This document shows positions 14,004 through 20,991 of a DNA stretch of 64,000 nt, one piece after another. Source of the DNA: Oikopleura dioica (lineage: Eukaryota > Animalia > Chordata). Location of the stretch: NCBI GenBank assembly GCA_907165135.1, contig OU015569.1, positions 11,842,001 through 11,906,000 on the forward strand. The letters run 5' to 3'. The position numbers were made by a program, and so were the translations under genes. The notes under the pieces are model-generated. The model was not told the origin of the DNA, ran no database searches, and saw only the letters and a list, made by a program, of their open reading frames with translations. Within the stretch, counting starts at the first letter, position 1. Each line of letters starts with the position of its first letter.

Positions 14004-15779
14004 TTATTTTGCAAAGATTCTAGTGGCAGTGAGAGCTAGAGCCTCGGCGTCGTCGAGGCTGTCCGGCAAGTCGCTTTTGATGACAGGTGGTAGCAGGAAA
14101 ATGAGAGTTGCGGAGAGCAAAGCGATCAGGGCGAAAATAGGAGTGCTGGTTCCGAAAAATGAGAGGATGAGCGGCGCGCAGGTCGAGCTCAAATTGCCGA
14201 AGGCACTAGAGTTTGGCTGAAATCGACAGTTTAAATGCATGACTTACAGTAGGGCAGACATCGCTCGAGCCCGGATGAAAGTGGGAGAGACTTCGGAAAC
14301 CATGGTAAACATGTAGGACATGTAGCTTTGAATCATGAGTTTGGAAGCGACTCCAAAGACGAGTTTCGGAATCCAGAACTCGTCTCCCTCTTCGTACTTT
14401 TGCAGCACCAACATGATCATGAAAAAGGCCGACGAAGCGGAAAGAAAGAAGGCGATTCCTTTTCGCCGAATTCGTTTCAGCAAAATCGCGTTGTAAGAAA
14501 TCCTCAGCGGCCCTTCCAAAAGGACCATCACCGCGAAAGTCACGTAGATGCAGCAGTGCATTTGGCCAGTGGCGAAAACGATGTTGTACCAGAGGAGCAT
14601 CGCGCAAGAACTGAAGAAAATTATAACAAGGAAGAAGAAGGAGGGGTCTTACTGTATCCAAATGAGGATGAAAAAGCGTCCGGAAACGGCTGTTCTTTTT
14701 AAATAATTACAGATCGTTTCTTCTTCGTGCTTTTCGCTCGGCGATTTGGGTTTCAGCGCTTGCAGTTGTTCAAGAATGGAGCTTCGCTCGATTTGAACGC
14801 CGTTTGTCTTGGCGATTTTCATGATCCAGTCGACTGCTTCCTCGATTCTTCCTTGCTCGAGGAGCCAGCGCGGGCTCTCCGGATAGTAGAAAATGTAGAA
14901 GACGGCAATCAGCATTGGGCTCGAGTAGACTTTGAAAGCCAGTCGCCAGTCGCGAATAAAGTACGTCACTAGAATCAGCCAGAAGACGCTGGCAGTCCAC
15001 ATGCCCGAGTTGACAAGCCCGATCATCCACTTCCAGGACTTCTTCGACAGCTCCATCATGTTCGGATAAGAGCCCAAGGCGGACACGCAGATTCCAAGCA
15101 CGCAAGAGCAAATCTTGAACTGAAGACTCGTCCCGGACGTTACCAAGCCTAAAACACACATTTTTCTCCATTCAAAGATTTTTGGCAAACCGAAATAGGC
15201 GAACATCGACATTAGCGCATAAAAAATCGCAGTTTTTCTCCGCCCAAATGCATCATAAACGATTCCGTTGAGCAGAACTCCAATCGAAGTGCAAAATAAA
15301 AAATAACTTTCGATGGGTTCCAAAATCATTCCTTTTCATTTCTTTTTTTATTATATTTTGTGAGCCCTTATTCTTAAAATGGTTGTTCGATGAGCCGCAT
15401 CTTCGCAAAGGAAATTGAATTCATTCGCGTACGAGCTTTCCATTGAGCACTCCTGGGCGCAGGAATCGCTCGAGTTGCGAGCGATTCTTGAACTTGAAGA
15501 ATTAAAATCGAAAGAATACTGAAAAAAAATCCGATAAAAAAATTCATCGAAAATTAAATTGCTTTACCTGCTCGAGTATTTTATTATTTTCATCGCACGC
15601 GTGGTCGAGTTCTTGGCCGAAGAAAAGGTTGTGGAAGTACAGTCCTTGCAGTGGCAGGATTATTACTGTATTGATAACTAGGAAATAATGTCAAATTTCA
15701 AAGCAATATCCGAATATTTACAAAGTGAGCGTTTCTGAAAGTAGCCAGTTCCCCAAGTTTCCTCCAGAAGAAGATCCAT
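14004..15779 (-). CDS. SLC22/organic cation transporter-like MFS protein (multi-exon)
   Basis: Start MDLLLEETWGTGYFQKR; Cys loop ending NEFNFLC; YDAFGRRK; YPESPRWL; SEVSPTFIRA; LPPVIKSDLPDSLDDAE are SLC22 signature motifs. Confidence 0.85.
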
Positions 15780-16366: not shown

Positions 16367-17596
16367 TCAGTTTCGGTTGGGTCTTGCTGGTCGTTTGTTC
16401 TGGCCCTTGTTGTTGGCTGGCTTCTTTGGCTGGCGCCTTTTTGGTGTTCGGTACTTTCGGGTTGTAGTCGTACTTGGCGTGTATTTAGTTGTTGTCGGTG
16501 TTGTTGTCGTTGTCGTGGTCGTGGTCGTGGTCGTTGTTGTGGTGGTTGAAGTGGTGGTAGTTGAGCTGGTGGTGGTTGGTTCTGGAGTAGTGTACTTATT
16601 GGTAGTTGTGTAGGGATCAGTGGCGGTCGTGTAGGAAGCGGTGGTGGTGGGTTCAGTAGTGTAGTCAGTTGTGTAGACGGAAGTCGCAGTAGTCGGCTCA
16701 GTGGTGATATCGATGTAGGGGCTTTGGGTGGTTTCTTCAGTTGTCACTCCTGTTAATGTAGACAGGGTTGTTTCCTCGTACGGCATCGTTGGCGGAGCAA
16801 CTGTAGTTGTCGTTTTGTACGGCGCCTTGGTCGTGGTTGGTTTGTAGGGATTTGGGGGAGTTGTTGGGTTGTAGGGATCGACCACTTGCCCGGTAGAGCT
16901 GTAATACGGGTTTTCGGGAACTTCACCGGGAATCTGATTGATGCAGACGTTTTCCATTCGCTGCAAATCGTTCATCAAGTGGTTCATTCTTCGCTGCCAC
17001 GAGCCGAGTTTCGGGCATTTTGACAAAACATCGTCGTTGAGAGCGCCCAACGCGAACTAGAAATGGAGACCGGAAACGTTGAGTTTATGATTACCTTGCT
17101 GCAGATTTTCTTCAACCGATCGAGCTGCTTCTCGCTGGCCATTGGCGACTTGAGAGCTTTCCCTTCGAAGCCGTTTTGTTCGTTCGCATTTCGCATCAAC
17201 GCGACGATTAACGCAAACTCGCGGTCAGCATCCAAAAGAGATTCTTCCAGAACTTCTGTTTCACGTCGTTTTCGATTGCCGTAATTGGCCGAGTCGGGGT
17301 TGTAGCCGCTCACCATCGCAGGCGGAATTCGGCACTTTCCAACAGCCAAGTGGTGCAGCGCGTCGAACAAGACCTGAGTTTTTGGAAAAGAAAGAAAAAA
17401 CGAACGAAAATGGTACCTTTGAAATTCGATGCTCGTACTTGCCGATTTTGTCGATTGGCGGATCGCAGACGTAGGCAGTCTCCATGTAGAAGTTGCAGCG
17501 ATCGATGGCCTTGGTGACTTTCTCTTCGAGTGTCATTGAGCTTGGATATTGCGCCTGGGCGACGGAAGCTGAGGCGAAAAAGGCGAAAAGCTTCAT
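16367..17596 (-). CDS. Secreted protein: signal peptide, 6-Cys helical region with RKRR site, Thr-rich mucin stalk, basic tail
   Basis: MKLFAFFASASVAQA signal; three exons joined by short GT-AG introns; poly-Thr/PTT repeats at 16440-16860; tail KRRQPKKPANNKGQNKRPARPNRN*. Confidence 0.8.
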
Positions 17597-18581: not shown

Positions 18582-18827
18582 TCCCCTTTTTGTAAATCTG
18601 CTACTTTCACTTGTTCTACCACCTGCCGCAATCTCTTCAAACTGTACATCGATAATAAAACAAAGAGCAAAATAGCTGTTTCTGTTTTGGTTCGCTTCTG
18701 GACAGGAGCTATCTCTTCCCCGCTATAGTAATAGTCTACTGCAAAATGTAAAAAAAATGAAAATAATTTTCACAATTTTTATTTTCACGATCACGTGTTT
18801 GTTATAAAGGAATGATTGTTTTTTCAG

Positions 18828-20991
18828 TCATCGAGTTCTAGTCAGAGTAACTGAAAAAGCTTGAGGCAGAAGATACCATTTTTCGGTTTCCATGTTGAAT
18901 TCTTCGTTCACTAACTCAAGAAACTCGCTGTTGTCTCCATAATAGACGAAATCTTGGTAGCTGTTGTAACAGTCTTTCATCATTTCTTCATCGGCGTAGA
19001 ATTCTCTTGAAACTGGAATTCTGATTTGAGAGCCGGAATGGTCGATGAGCGTGTTTTGGAGAATGAATTCGGAGTTTTCGATTCGGTCCAGCACCATTTG
19101 GTGGAAAAGTATTGAAGAGTCGCGATTTAGATAGACGCCGGTGACGGTAAGGGGACGGGAGAAGACGAAGTTGCCGTGGAGGAGGACTGAATTTTTAATT
19201 TTTGATTTTTAGCTTTGAATTTTTACCTTGCTCGAAATCAAAATTGGCATCCATCGAAGCGCTTGAGTTTTCTCTGATAATTTGCAATCCACTTCTATTC
19301 AAATAAGTCTTGAATTTCAATCTTCTTAGAAGCAATTCAATTTCGTTCGTTTGAAATTTTTGTTCTTCAAATTTCGGATTGAGGTTGAAGCCAGCCAAAC
19401 TCCGCGGATAAATCACCATTGTCAGTTGAGTGAAGATTTTTTCAATAGTAAAAAATCTTTCCATTTCCCGATCTCCAACTTTCAAATCATTTTTGAGTGC
19501 CCATCTCAAAAGCACCGAAACTGAAATGGGAACGCAAAGATCGCTTTCTTTTTGGTTTAAAACATTCTTCGTCACGTTCTTGAAGTCGAAATTGATCTGT
19601 TTTGTCAGTTTCTGTTTTATACTGGCCATTGCAGTTGATTTCGTCAAATTCGGATCGTCCAAGCAAAAATCAGAAGACGCGTTTTCAAGAGAAATGATTT
19701 TTGACAAGTTTTGGATGCCTTCGGTTGATGGTTTTCTTTTCTTTGAGAGCCAGCCAGCATTGCAAGTCTAAGAAAGATTTATTTTTTTATAAGAAAGTTA
19801 AGACTTACCTCAAGTTCTTTTTTGATGATTTCTTTCTCTTTTTCTTTGATCGGTTTGAATAAAAGAGTCCAGGCCGTCGTCGACTCGCAAAGGATAAAAA
19901 TATGAAGGAGAGATTCATCTCTTCCGTAGTGTCCGCCTATCTGCTGGCTATAAGAAAAGGCAGGAGACCCAGCATCTACGAAAAAAAATATAAAACACGA
20001 GAATTTTCAAGAAGCTCAAAACTTACATAAACAACTGAAATTTCTAAATCTGTTTCCTGTCCTCGCGTAACCCATCTCCCGATAACTCTCTCGTCCAGTT
20101 ATTTCGTGAATAATGCTGAAATCGATCCACTTGGCTTCTCCATTTTTCAAAAGGACATTTTCCGGCTTCTCATCGAAATGCGAAATTCCAATTTTGTCCA
20201 AATACTCTTCTCCCTCTTTGACGCCAATCGCAATTTTCTTCCTTTCTTCCAAATTCAAATCATTATTCTTCAATTTGCTTCTCAAATCCGAGTCGCATTT
20301 CTCCATAATCGTAATCCAGCCAGCACAATCTTCTTTCTCCAAGTCGCTGCTCAAAAAGACTTCGATGTTGCAGAAATTTTTGATCACGTTTTTGTGAAAA
20401 GGAATCAATCGGGCATCATCTCTTTCTCTGTCTTGGGCAATTTCGTATTCTAAGAAATAAAAAGACAATAAAAAATAAAAAATTACCTTTCGAAAGATGA
20501 ATTTCAAAGCCCAATTCTTCATCCCCCACAAACAGCGCCGGATCAAAAGCCTGAACCCGAACAGCAGATTCCAATTCTCCGAATTTTTCTTCCAAAACAA
20601 TCGCTTCTCCTCCAGCTGAAATCTTCTGAAGAGAAGGGTCGAGAATCCATTCTCCGGTTTCTTCTTTTAATTCCGAACGTTGAATTTTTCGTCCTTCGAA
20701 GCCTGGATTTTTGTCGAGAATCGTTTTTTGAAATGAATTTATTGCCCATTCTTCCTGAATTTTTCGTCCAGTAATTAGGACAGTTCCAGATAGTTTTCCT
20801 TTTCCATGTTCGAAAATGACCTCCTCCCATGCAGCACAACCATCATCTTCAAACTGCATTCTGTCCAGCGACAAAATCAACCTGTCCAAATCATCTCTGC
20901 TCGTCGTTCTCTTCAATCTCTTTGGAAACTCTTCCAGCCATTTCTCAACAACTTCTCTTGTCAGTTCTTCTGGATGAGTTGAAACTTGCAT
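18828..20991 (-). CDS. Atypical protein kinase domain fused to a putative papain-fold cysteine peptidase domain (5 exons)
   Basis: G-loop SAGGEAIV, beta3 AVRVQ, IMEKCD hinge, HFDEKPENVLL, WIDFS; then VLNQKESDLCVPIS...FHQMVLD...FILQNT. Exons join in frame through GT-AG introns. Confidence 0.75.

What the first reader, a model, noticed from the sequence alone, without database searches (positions are those of the whole stretch)
18828..20991. Kinase fused to a putative papain-fold cysteine protease
After the kinase domain the spliced protein reads VLNQKESDLCVPISV ... LFHQMVLDRIENSEFILQNT. This mirrors the papain-clan layout: oxyanion Gln six residues before the catalytic Cys (19534-19536), then a His-strand (19101-19103) and a strand-Asn (19053-19055), as in VKNQGSCGSCWAF...HAV...WIVKNS. 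There is no signal peptide, so it would be intracellular. The kinase is atypical: Arg replaces the beta3 Lys (AVRV), HFDEKPEN replaces HRDLKPEN, and DFS replaces DFG, while the catalytic Asp, Asn and Mg-binding Asp remain. A phosphorylation- or nucleotide-gated protease module is an architecture I do not recognise in animals.
Basis: partly seen in the sequence, partly recalled or inferred. Interest (0 to 1): 0.78.

Follow-up and report, generated by a model that had tools for sequence, protein, structure and literature searches.

The report
Kinase fused to papain-fold protease
This intact five-exon gene of the tunicate Oikopleura dioica joins an unusual protein-kinase-like domain to a very divergent cysteine-protease domain of the papain fold in one chain. 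It is one of more than 130 copies of a gene family that no database or paper I searched describes, and its function is untested.

Summary
A minus-strand, five-exon GT-AG gene (18828-20991, 664 codons) encodes an N-terminal region, a kinase-like domain, a conserved linker and a ~300-aa C-terminal domain.

The C-terminal domain matches no Pfam model or solved-structure sequence. An AlphaFold2 model of the closest paralogue (pLDDT 77.7, pTM 0.73) resembles only papain-like (clan CA) enzymes: all 50 listed best matches among 48,161 solved chains, best Z 9.4. The Cys starts the core helix. The alignment starts put Gln and Cys on the oxyanion Gln and catalytic Cys of cathepsins B and C, PCAT1 and ComA.

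Across about 75 family members Gln, Cys and His are 96-99% conserved and Asn 93%; three copies have Ser for Cys.

The kinase is atypical family-wide: Arg replaces the beta3 Lys in 51 of 51 copies, while the HxDxKxxN loop is kept. DFS instead of DFG is limited to this copy's subgroup.

The genome is O. dioica OKI2018_I69, with at least 130 copies. Named relatives elsewhere are all O. dioica; the rest are metagenome fragments.

Fusion is supported by two paralogues with a single ORF running from the kinase into the Cys-bearing half. Catalysis, gating and expression of this copy are untested.

The scan has already reported this family many times on other DNA of this genome.

The parts
18828..20991 (-). 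Whole coding region. Five exons: 20487-20991, 20027-20449, 19809-19975, 19227-19767 and 18828-19186 (stop codon 18828-18830). Four GT-AG introns of 37-51 nt.
   Evidence: Sequence reading; exon translations without stops; the same exon structure is seen in paralogues.
20632..20991 (-). N-terminal region of about 120 aa. It is hydrophilic, has no signal peptide and no known domain.
   Evidence: no Pfam match; conserved among family members (alignment A4).
19809..20622 (-). Atypical protein-kinase-like domain, spanning the end of exon 1, exon 2 and exon 3. It runs from the GGEA loop to a CxWKxxWxLL helix that I take to be alphaF.
   Evidence: Pkinase PF00069 scores E 2.6e-8, 34 bits against a cut-off of 31.7, on exon 2. 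Only profile positions about 57-160 of 263 match in full-length relatives. The best solved relatives are CDK9 and DAPK1, over the catalytic-loop region only.
20602..20613 (-). GGEA, in the position of the glycine-rich loop.
   Evidence: Invariant in 51 of 51 paralogues read.
20557..20559 (-). Arg in place of the beta3 (VAIK) Lys.
   Evidence: Arg in 51 of 51 paralogues. The assignment to beta3 is inferred from its spacing after the GGEA loop.
20157..20180 (-). Catalytic loop HFDEKPEN (pattern HxDxKxxN).
   Evidence: Asp, Lys and Asn are present in 55 of 55 paralogues and His in 54 of 55.
20115..20123 (-). DFS in place of DFG.
   Evidence: DFS occurs only in this copy's subgroup (L001, L002, L004, L005, L006, L010). 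Most paralogues have DFG or DYG.
19636..19665 (-). Conserved linker motif CLDDPNLTKS between the kinase and the protease. Its role is unknown.
   Evidence: Alignment A3. The Ser and Leu columns are among the most conserved. This part has low pLDDT in both models.
18831..19566 (-). Papain-fold (clan CA) domain, interrupted by the intron at 19187-19226.
   Evidence: AF2 models of paralogues L029 and L003; structure searches.
19552..19554 (-). Gln six residues before the Cys; candidate oxyanion-hole residue.
   Evidence: Gln in 77 of 78 members. The alignment starts place it on Gln23 of cathepsin B, Gln228 of cathepsin C and Gln11 of ComA (the residue numbers of the known enzymes are from my own knowledge).
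19534..19536 (-). Candidate catalytic Cys, the first residue of the core helix.
   Evidence: Cys in 76 of 79 members and Ser in 3. In the L003 model the helix begins at the equivalent Cys58. The alignment offsets map it to the catalytic Cys of cathepsins B and C, PCAT1 and ComA.
19101..19103 (-). Candidate catalytic His (motif FHQM), at the start of a beta-strand.
   Evidence: His in 72 of 73 members. It lies in strand 201-212 of the L003 model.
19053..19055 (-). Candidate third triad residue Asn (motif LQNT), 16 residues after the His.
   Evidence: Asn in 68 of 73 members. It lies just after the neighbouring strand 215-219. The spacing equals that of papain His159 and Asn175 (my own knowledge).
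18778..18783 (-). AATAAA about 45 nt after the stop codon; possible polyadenylation signal.
   Evidence: Sequence reading only; not tested.

Best explanation
The locus is an intact member of a large gene family (at least 130 genomic copies). I found it only in Oikopleura dioica and in unnamed marine-metagenome fragments. It encodes one cytosolic chain with four parts: an N-terminal region of unknown fold, a shortened and atypical protein-kinase-like domain, a conserved linker, and a highly diverged papain-fold (clan CA) domain. The kinase-like domain has Arg for the beta3 Lys but keeps the catalytic-loop Asp, Lys and Asn and the metal-binding Asp. The papain-fold domain keeps the Gln, Cys, His and Asn arrangement. 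Shown here: the gene structure, the kinase-like domain, the predicted papain fold, the positions and conservation of the candidate catalytic residues, purifying selection, and family size and range. Inferred: the C-terminal domain is an active thiol peptidase or isopeptidase working inside the cell, and the kinase-like domain on the same chain controls or targets it by nucleotide binding or phosphorylation. The family's size, clustering, broken copies and narrow taxonomic range suggest a fast-evolving role such as defence or genetic conflict. That last point is speculation.
For: Gene model. Kinase-like domain. Papain fold: the L003 paralogue model (80% and 84% identical to the window's exons 4 and 5) has pLDDT 77.7 and pTM 0.73, with the core above 90. 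All 50 listed best matches of 48,161 solved chains are clan CA: Der p 1 Z 9.4 over 157 residues at 3.7 A, xylellain 9.3, cathepsin B 8.9, cathepsin C 8.8, PCAT1 8.7. An independent first model of paralogue L029 gave the same families at Z 5-6. The Atlas neighbours are C39 and C39-like peptidases and BtrH_N. Catalytic residues: the Cys is the first residue of the core helix; the alignment offsets put Gln and Cys on the known oxyanion Gln and catalytic Cys; His and Asn are 16 residues apart on neighbouring strands. Conservation: Gln 77/78, Cys 76/79 (the rest Ser), His 72/73, Asn 68/73. Selection: dN/dS 0.19-0.53. This copy departs from only 1 of 42 highly conserved columns of the domain. Fusion: single ORFs run from the start codon through the kinase into the Cys-bearing half in L025 and L026; full-length Bergen-strain proteins of 690-795 aa carry both parts; a kinase exon precedes even the most divergent relative, P0125. 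Range: only 209 hits among 1.84 billion representatives, and every named one is O. dioica. Family transcripts are present in oligo-dT RNA-seq of another O. dioica lineage.
Against: No sequence method links the domain to any peptidase family: Pfam, solved-structure sequences, hhalign against this genome's own cathepsins and language-model features. Foldseek E-values were only about 0.1. The structural Z of 9.4 is moderate. The model is of a paralogue, not this copy, and contains a 15-residue read-through of an in-frame intron. I could not measure triad geometry because no coordinates were available. About 40 other columns are as conserved as the triad, so conservation is not specific to catalysis. 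Lys-to-Arg at beta3 is the classical kinase-dead change, and Pfam sees only the middle third of the kinase. This copy also has DFS and lacks two Trp that are almost invariant in the family. No RNA reads of this locus were found.
Confidence: 0.6

Rival explanations
1. The papain-fold domain is an enzyme but not a protease. It could be a transglutaminase, an acyl- or acetyl-transferase, or an amidase or deamidase, all of which use the same fold and a Cys-His pair.
For: Clan CA includes such enzymes (PMC10318531). The structural matches include phytochelatin synthase, a CD lyase, the transferase-like CtaG and BtrH_N. There is no sequence-level tie to any peptidase family.
Against: The best and most numerous matches are true peptidases of families C1, C39 and C47. 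A Gln six residues before the Cys with Asn 16 after the His is the peptidase-type arrangement. According to PMC10318531, most of the transglutaminase-type cluster lacks the canonical oxyanion residue.
Confidence: 0.15
2. Both domains are pseudoenzymes. The protein would be a scaffold or binding module that keeps the folds but has lost catalysis.
For: The beta3 Lys is Arg in 51 of 51 copies. The kinase is truncated and barely passes the Pfam threshold. Some paralogues have Ser for Cys, Asp for His or no Asn. Many other columns are as conserved as the triad.
Against: Asp, Lys and Asn of the catalytic loop are present in 55 of 55 copies and the DFG Asp in 54 of 55. Gln, Cys and His are kept at 96-99% even in relatives only 23-33% identical, such as P0125, P0081 and P0029. 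The only replacement of Cys is Ser, another nucleophile; PMC10318531 reports partial activity of Cys-to-Ser papain-like enzymes.
Confidence: 0.15
3. The kinase and protease parts are not one functional chain. They would either be made from separate transcripts, or the chain would cut itself at the conserved linker so that the parts act independently.
For: No RNA reads cover this locus. The linker motif CLDDPNLTKS is highly conserved and has low confidence in the models, which fits a cleavage or docking site.
Against: One ORF spans the kinase and the Cys-bearing half in L025 and L026. The frame is continuous across all four short GT-AG introns here. The order kinase then protease is kept in every copy read, and in the metagenome contig L072. 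Self-cleavage after translation would not contradict a fusion gene.
Confidence: 0.07
4. The Q...C...H...N pattern is a chance resemblance and the domain is not papain-like.
For: No sequence-based method finds a peptidase relationship. Foldseek found nothing at E <= 0.001.
Against: Two independent models gave lists dominated by clan CA enzymes. The alignment offsets place the Cys on the catalytic Cys in several unrelated clan CA families. Even the weak Foldseek list is led by clan CA entries.
Confidence: 0.03

Closest known systems
Papain family C1 (cathepsins B, C, L; Der p 1; xylellain)
   Same: It gives the best structural matches (Z 8.8-9.4, about 155 aligned residues). It shares the helical lobe plus beta lobe, Cys at the helix N-terminus, Gln six residues before the Cys and Asn 16 after the His.
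   Different: There is no detectable sequence relationship. The Pfam C1 model finds this genome's ordinary cathepsins but none of the family loci. The protein has no signal peptide and no recognisable propeptide, it is fused behind a kinase, and the NSWG and Trp motifs are missing.
C39 and C39-like peptidase domains (PCAT1, ComA)
   Same: Structural matches are nearly as good (Z 8.4-8.7, rmsd 3.1-3.5 A) and these are the nearest ESM Atlas clusters. They are also cytosolic papain-fold modules fused to another enzymatic machine, with Gln, Cys, His and Asp/Asn in the same spacing.
   Different: They are bacterial, about 130-150 aa, and fused to ABC transporters, and they cleave double-glycine leader peptides. 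The domain here is about twice as long, with an extra helical lobe, and has no Pfam C39 match.
EDR1/CTR1-type Raf-like kinases of plants (EDR1 domain PF14381 plus a kinase)
   Same: This is the one published case I found of a papain-like-fold domain habitually fused to a protein kinase (PMC10318531).
   Different: The domain order is opposite: EDR1 lies N-terminal to a canonical kinase. The EDR1 domain resembles C71 and C93 peptidases. No Pfam EDR1 match was found here. It belongs to a different kingdom.
Plasmodium SERA family
   Same: It is a multi-copy papain-fold family in which some paralogues have Ser in place of the catalytic Cys. SERA5 is among the structural matches (Z 7.2-7.4).
   Different: SERA proteins are secreted C1-type proteins without a kinase (my own knowledge).
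IRE1 and RNase L (a kinase or pseudokinase controlling a fused effector enzyme)
   Same: This is an analogy of mechanism only: one chain in which nucleotide binding or phosphorylation of a kinase-type domain switches on a C-terminal hydrolase (my own knowledge).
   Different: Their effector is a helical KEN ribonuclease, not a protease. No homology is implied or tested.

Membership tests
Clan CA (papain-like fold) | Overall fold resembles solved clan CA enzymes | tested here: met
   All 50 listed best matches of 48,161 chains are clan CA, best Z 9.4 over 157 residues at 3.7 A. A second model gave the same families. Atlas neighbours are C39-type. The evidence rests on paralogue models, not on this copy itself.
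Clan CA (papain-like fold) | [quoted passage not shown] | tested here: met
   In the L003 model the helix 58-73 begins at Cys58, which is equivalent to window codon 19534-19536. The L029 model shows the same: helix 80-95 begins at Cys80.
Clan CA (papain-like fold) | His on a beta-strand, with a polar third residue on the neighbouring strand, in triad geometry | tested here: inconclusive
   His204 lies in strand 201-212 and Asn220 directly follows strand 215-219. No coordinates were available, so distances could not be measured.
Clan CA (papain-like fold) | Oxyanion-hole Gln before the Cys | tested here: met
   Gln is at position -6 in 77 of 78 members. The alignment starts map it to the known Gln of cathepsins B and C and ComA. 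The mapping assumes no gap in the first nine aligned residues.
Peptidase family C1 (Pfam PF00112) | Significant match to the family profile | tested here: not met
   No match for the window's exons or any of 74 family sequences, even at E <= 1. A genome-wide PF00112 search found none of the family loci. hhalign against this genome's own cathepsins gave probability 0.09.
Peptidase family C1 | Signal peptide and inhibitory propeptide | tested here: not met
   The N-terminus is hydrophilic. No propeptide-type Pfam family matches. A kinase-like domain precedes the protease instead.
Peptidase family C39 (PF03412, PF13529) | Significant match to the family profile | tested here: not met
   No Pfam match. 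The similarity is structural only.
Eukaryotic protein kinase (Pkinase PF00069) | Profile match above the curated cut-off | tested here: met
   34 bits against a cut-off of 31.7 on exon 2. Full-length relatives score 34-45 bits, covering only profile positions about 57-160 of 263.
Eukaryotic protein kinase | Beta3 Lys (VAIK) | tested here: not met
   Arg here and in 51 of 51 paralogues.
Eukaryotic protein kinase | Catalytic-loop Asp and Asn, and the DFG Asp | tested here: met
   HFDEKPEN and DFS are present here. Asp, Lys and Asn are in 55 of 55 paralogues and the DFG Asp in 54 of 55.
Eukaryotic protein kinase | Complete C-lobe (APE motif, helices alphaG to alphaI) | tested here: inconclusive
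   The alignment shows G[ST]P.F and a CxWKxxWxLL helix, then the linker. Nothing beyond the DFG motif is recognised by Pfam.
EDR1-domain kinases (PF14381 plus a kinase) | EDR1 domain profile match, N-terminal to the kinase | tested here: not met
   No PF14381 match. The domain order is opposite.

The most novel reading that the evidence does not exclude
The family is a lineage-specific, single-chain sensor-effector system. Nucleotide binding or phosphorylation of the kinase-type domain would release a cytosolic papain-fold protease or deconjugating enzyme. The expansion to over 130 fast-evolving copies would serve innate defence or intragenomic conflict in an animal said to have a reduced immune repertoire (my own recollection, not checked here). 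This would be a new kind of animal immune or conflict module.
Probability: 0.15. Interest if true: 0.85.

Novelty: new variant of a known kind. Interest (0 to 1): 0.58.

Why it matters
Both folds are well known. The novelty lies in three points. First, the C-terminal domain is a papain-fold family so diverged that Pfam, HMMER against solved structures, profile-profile comparison and language-model features all miss it. Second, it is joined to a kinase-like domain in one animal protein, an arrangement for which I found no published animal example. Third, it has expanded to more than 130 copies in the most compact chordate genome.

Public records call these proteins only 'protein kinase domain-containing' or 'uncharacterized'. 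If the protease is active and controlled by the kinase-type domain, the family would be a new regulated intracellular protease system. It would also be a candidate for the poorly understood defence or conflict biology of larvaceans.

If it turns out to be a pair of pseudoenzymes, it is still a striking case of large-scale expansion of a two-fold scaffold.

Tried and rejected
- **Word search.** The word-index protein search with the exon-4-type region of paralogue L025 found nothing. A second search seeded with a database relative found 28 O. dioica or metagenome proteins.
- **Pfam.** Scans of the C-terminal exons and of 74 family sequences gave only chance-level hits.
- **Solved-structure sequences.** A profile search found only a chance hit to Atg16, E 0.56.
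- **Profile-profile comparison.** hhalign of the family alignment against a shallow alignment of this genome's own cathepsin exons gave probability 0.09.
- **Foldseek.** Against PDB it gave nothing at E <= 0.001 for either model. The second list is nevertheless led by clan CA entries.
- **Language-model look-alikes.** The best score for the C-terminal domain was 0.76, which is uninformative.
- **RNA evidence.** No listed run holds the stretch. Three oligo-dT RNA-seq runs with the same species label gave only 10-13 reads each. These matched short conserved stretches at 90-99% and then diverged. Their overhangs translate to motifs of Bergen-type family proteins. So they show that the family is transcribed in another lineage and say nothing about this copy. 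The single-cell run gave no reads, which is no test.
- **UBA tail.** I checked the lead from an earlier scan note on paralogue L054. By eye a UBA-like pattern spans its last intron, but Pfam on the two exon pieces found nothing. This is inconclusive.
- **Discarded alignment.** The first alignment, A1, misplaced the start of the exon-5 pieces onto a similar exon-4 motif and was discarded. A2 and A3 use trimmed pieces.
- **Paralogue fetching.** About 65 of the 130 or more copies were therefore read.
- **Not done.** The joined, spliced protein of this window has no reference. All searches were exon by exon, and the structures are of paralogues. No complex prediction was run.
Full report
**1. The observation**

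On the minus strand, 18828-20991 holds a five-exon gene. The exons are 20487-20991, 20027-20449, 19809-19975, 19227-19767 and 18828-19186. All four introns are GT-AG and 37-51 nt long, and the reading frame is continuous across them. Each exon translates without a stop, giving 664 codons.

The coordinates given for Cys (19534-19536), His (19101-19103) and Asn (19053-19055) are exact, and the Gln lies at 19552-19554. AVRV, HFDEKPEN and DFS are also there. The first 20 residues are hydrophilic, so nothing suggests a signal peptide. An AATAAA lies about 45 nt after the stop codon.

The joined protein was never assembled for a search or a fold.

**2. The organism and the family**

The window's genome has 64,281,565 bases in 19 contigs. 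A family relative in the public collection is named Oidioi.mRNA.OKI2018_I69.chr2.g8366. It sits on a contig of 16,158,756 bases, exactly the length of contig C5 of this genome. The paper on that assembly gives 64.3 Mb in 19 scaffolds (PMC8008620). So the genome is Oikopleura dioica OKI2018_I69.

Six-frame searches of this genome found 134 places matching exon 4 and 125 matching exon 5, at 29-91% identity. A minority of them contain stop codons. Many are clustered, for example on C2 at 11.6-12.7 Mb, where the window lies, and on C1 at 15.4-16.6 Mb.

A profile of the C-terminal domain, run against 1.84 billion representative proteins, found only 209 hits at E <= 0.001. Most are exon-sized fragments. 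Every hit that carries a name is O. dioica, labelled only 'Protein kinase domain-containing protein' or 'Uncharacterized protein'. The others come from ENA or JGI metagenome contigs.

I found no paper on the family. The scan itself has reported it many times in other windows of this genome.

**3. The kinase-like part**

Pfam Pkinase matches exon 2 just above its cut-off: 34 bits against 31.7. In full-length relatives only profile positions about 57-160 of 263 are matched. Against solved structures the best relatives are CDK9 and DAPK1, again only over the hinge, catalytic loop and DFG. Language-model features also say kinase, with a score of 0.97.

Counts over the paralogues I read:
- GGEA, in the place of the glycine-rich loop, is invariant (51 of 51).
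- The residue that by spacing should be the beta3 Lys is Arg in 51 of 51.
- In HxDxKxxN, the Asp, Lys and Asn are present in 55 of 55.
- The DFG Asp is present in 54 of 55.

DFS is a trait of this copy's small subgroup only. After G[ST]P.F and a CxWKxxWxLL helix, which I take to be alphaF, the chain passes into the linker. The C-lobe therefore looks shortened. I could not fold this part, so that reading is an inference.

In this copy the helix reads CESTTAW. It lacks a Trp that all 56 other copies read keep (codons 19878-19883).

**4. The C-terminal domain**

Nothing in Pfam matches it, nor do the sequences of solved structures.

Because the domain of this copy is split by an intron, I folded paralogues that can be given by reference.

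- **L029.** This paralogue has no intron in the domain. With 57 aligned rows the model reached pLDDT 67. Its best matches among 48,161 representative solved chains were papain-like enzymes at Z 5-6.
- **L003.** This is the closest paralogue, 80% and 84% identical to exons 4 and 5. Its ORF contains a 15-residue read-through of an in-frame intron. With 74 rows, including 17 spliced database proteins, the model reached pLDDT 77.7 and pTM 0.73, with the core above 90.

For the L003 model, all 50 listed best matches are clan CA proteins:

| Match | Z | Aligned residues | rmsd (A) |
|---|---|---|---|
| Der p 1 | 9.4 | 157 | 3.7 |
| Xylellain | 9.3 | 158 | 3.9 |
| Der f 1 | 9.2 | 155 | 3.6 |
| Cathepsin B | 8.9 | 156 | 3.7 |
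| Cathepsin C | 8.8 | 158 | 4.2 |
| PCAT1 | 8.7 | 128 | 3.1 |
| ComA | 8.5 | 125 | 3.3 |

Lower in the list come staphopain, IdeS, streptopain, ATG4, UfSP, ZUFSP and others. The tool warns that Z under 8 can be a common arrangement. Here 12 chains exceed 8 and no unrelated fold intrudes among the listed 50. The nearest ESM Atlas clusters are Peptidase_C39, C39_2 and BtrH_N. Foldseek gave only E about 0.1, but its list is also led by clan CA entries.

**5. The catalytic residues**

In the L003 model the Cys (residue 58) is the first residue of helix 58-73. The His (204) lies in strand 201-212. The Asn (220) directly follows the neighbouring strand 215-219.

The first aligned positions reported map the residues as follows:
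- Cathepsin B: model 49 to chain 20, so Gln52 falls on 23 and Cys58 on 29.
- Cathepsin C: model 49 to chain 225, so they fall on 228 and 234.
- PCAT1: model 51 to chain 14, so Cys58 falls on 21.
- ComA: model 52 to chain 11, so they fall on 11 and 17.

From my own knowledge these are the oxyanion Gln and catalytic Cys of those enzymes. The mapping assumes no gap in the first few aligned residues. His and Asn are 16 residues apart, as are His159 and Asn175 of papain (my own knowledge). I had no coordinates, so the triad distances are not measured.

**6. Conservation and selection**

The counts below come from about 75 family members: 59 distinct paralogues of this genome plus 16 database proteins.
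- Gln is kept in 77 of 78, with one Glu.
- Cys is kept in 76 of 79. The three exceptions all have Ser.
- His is kept in 72 of 73, with one Asp.
- Asn is kept in 68 of 73.

Gln, Cys and His are kept even in relatives only 23-33% identical to the reference (P0125, P0081, P0029). P0125 reads PHAV...VIKNS, closer to the classical papain motifs.

These columns rank 9th, 24th and 12th of 292, and about 40 other columns are as conserved. Conservation is therefore consistent with catalysis but not specific to it.

dN/dS between this copy and eleven paralogues is 0.19-0.53, highest for the most recent duplicates. This copy departs from 1 of 42 highly conserved columns: Trp to Leu in SGW, codon 19285-19287. 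That is within the normal range for the family.

**7. One chain or two**

In paralogues L025 and L026 a single ORF of about 635 aa runs from the start codon through the N-terminal region and the kinase into the Cys-bearing half of the papain-fold domain. Bergen-strain gene models of 690-795 aa hold both parts. The metagenome contig that encodes the most divergent relative, P0125, has a kinase-matching exon just upstream on the same strand.

I could not obtain RNA evidence for this copy. The available raw RNA runs come from another lineage. Their few reads match only 30-nt conserved stretches and then diverge into sequences that translate to Bergen-type family proteins. The family is therefore transcribed in that lineage, and this locus remains untested.

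**8. How it most likely works**

Shown here: the architecture, the predicted fold, the retained residues, the selective constraint, and the size and range of the family.

Inferred:
- The C-terminal domain is an intracellular thiol peptidase or isopeptidase.
- The kinase-type domain keeps everything needed to hold Mg-nucleotide and a catalytic base, with Arg for the beta3 Lys. It controls or directs the peptidase, or is its partner in a two-step action.
- The strongly conserved linker motif CLDDPNLTKS might be a docking, phosphorylation or self-cleavage site. Nothing here tests that.

An earlier scan note reports a UBA tail on one paralogue, which would point towards ubiquitin-type substrates. 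I saw a UBA-like pattern across the last intron of L054, but Pfam on the exon pieces found nothing. This stays a lead.

**9. Comparison with what is known**

The domain has the clan CA fold. It is not a sequence-level member of C1 or C39: the profile tests failed. It is best described as a new, very divergent clan CA family.

The only published habitual pairing of a papain-like fold with a kinase that I found is the plant EDR1/CTR1 type. It has the opposite domain order and an unrelated subfamily (PMC10318531). The same paper notes that papain-like enzymes with Ser for Cys can keep partial activity, which bears on the three Ser copies.

**10. Verdict**

This is a typical intact copy of an undescribed family known only from Oikopleura dioica and unnamed marine metagenome fragments, and the scan has met the family repeatedly. 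Its biochemical activity, regulation and biological role are open.

Noticed in passing
L024, L026/L031 and L035 (paralogues on C4:5.41 Mb, C4:3.23 and 3.29 Mb, C5:15.52 Mb): Three distinct paralogues have Ser in place of the candidate catalytic Cys while keeping His. This recalls the Cys/Ser alternation in the Plasmodium SERA family.
   Followed up: partly
L054:2700-2934 (G000 C2, about 12.5067-12.5069 Mb): This paralogue has a sixth exon. Across the last intron the protein reads like a UBA domain (I..L...GF...A...gd.e.A..yL). Pfam on the separate exon pieces finds nothing.
   Followed up: partly
L028:2763-3401 and database proteins P0179, P0176, P0180: Some family members start with a hydrophobic stretch of about 20 residues that the window's copy lacks. 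It may be a signal anchor or an annotation artefact.
   Followed up: no
window 19285-19287 and 19878-19883: The window's copy has Leu where 76 of 78 members have Trp (SGW). It also has Ser-Thr where the other copies have Trp-Lys in the presumed alphaF helix of the kinase.
   Followed up: partly
window 16367-17050 (-): There is an ORF of 227 aa with long Thr/Pro-rich, mucin-like repeats just downstream of the gene. It may encode a secreted glycoprotein.
   Followed up: no
window 14206-15329 (-): There are ORFs with several hydrophobic segments that resemble exons of a sugar or organic-ion transporter-type membrane protein.
   Followed up: no
G000 C1:5969804-5970737 and C16:2559-3492; C5:4609475-4610582 and C5:4651583-4652690: These pairs of family copies have identical scores in both exon searches. 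They are either very recent duplications or duplicated assembly pieces.
   Followed up: no
P0126 (CAG5114306.1, OKI2018_I69 chr2 g8366): This annotated protein joins a partial family C-terminal region to a DnaJ-like segment (...YYAILGV...HPDKNP...). It is probably a chimeric gene model.
   Followed up: no
window 19380-19415 and 19125-19160 (family motifs YPRSLAGxNLNP and RPLTVTGxYLNP): Two conserved motifs in the two halves of the domain resemble each other enough to mislead MAFFT. This is probably chance.
   Followed up: no
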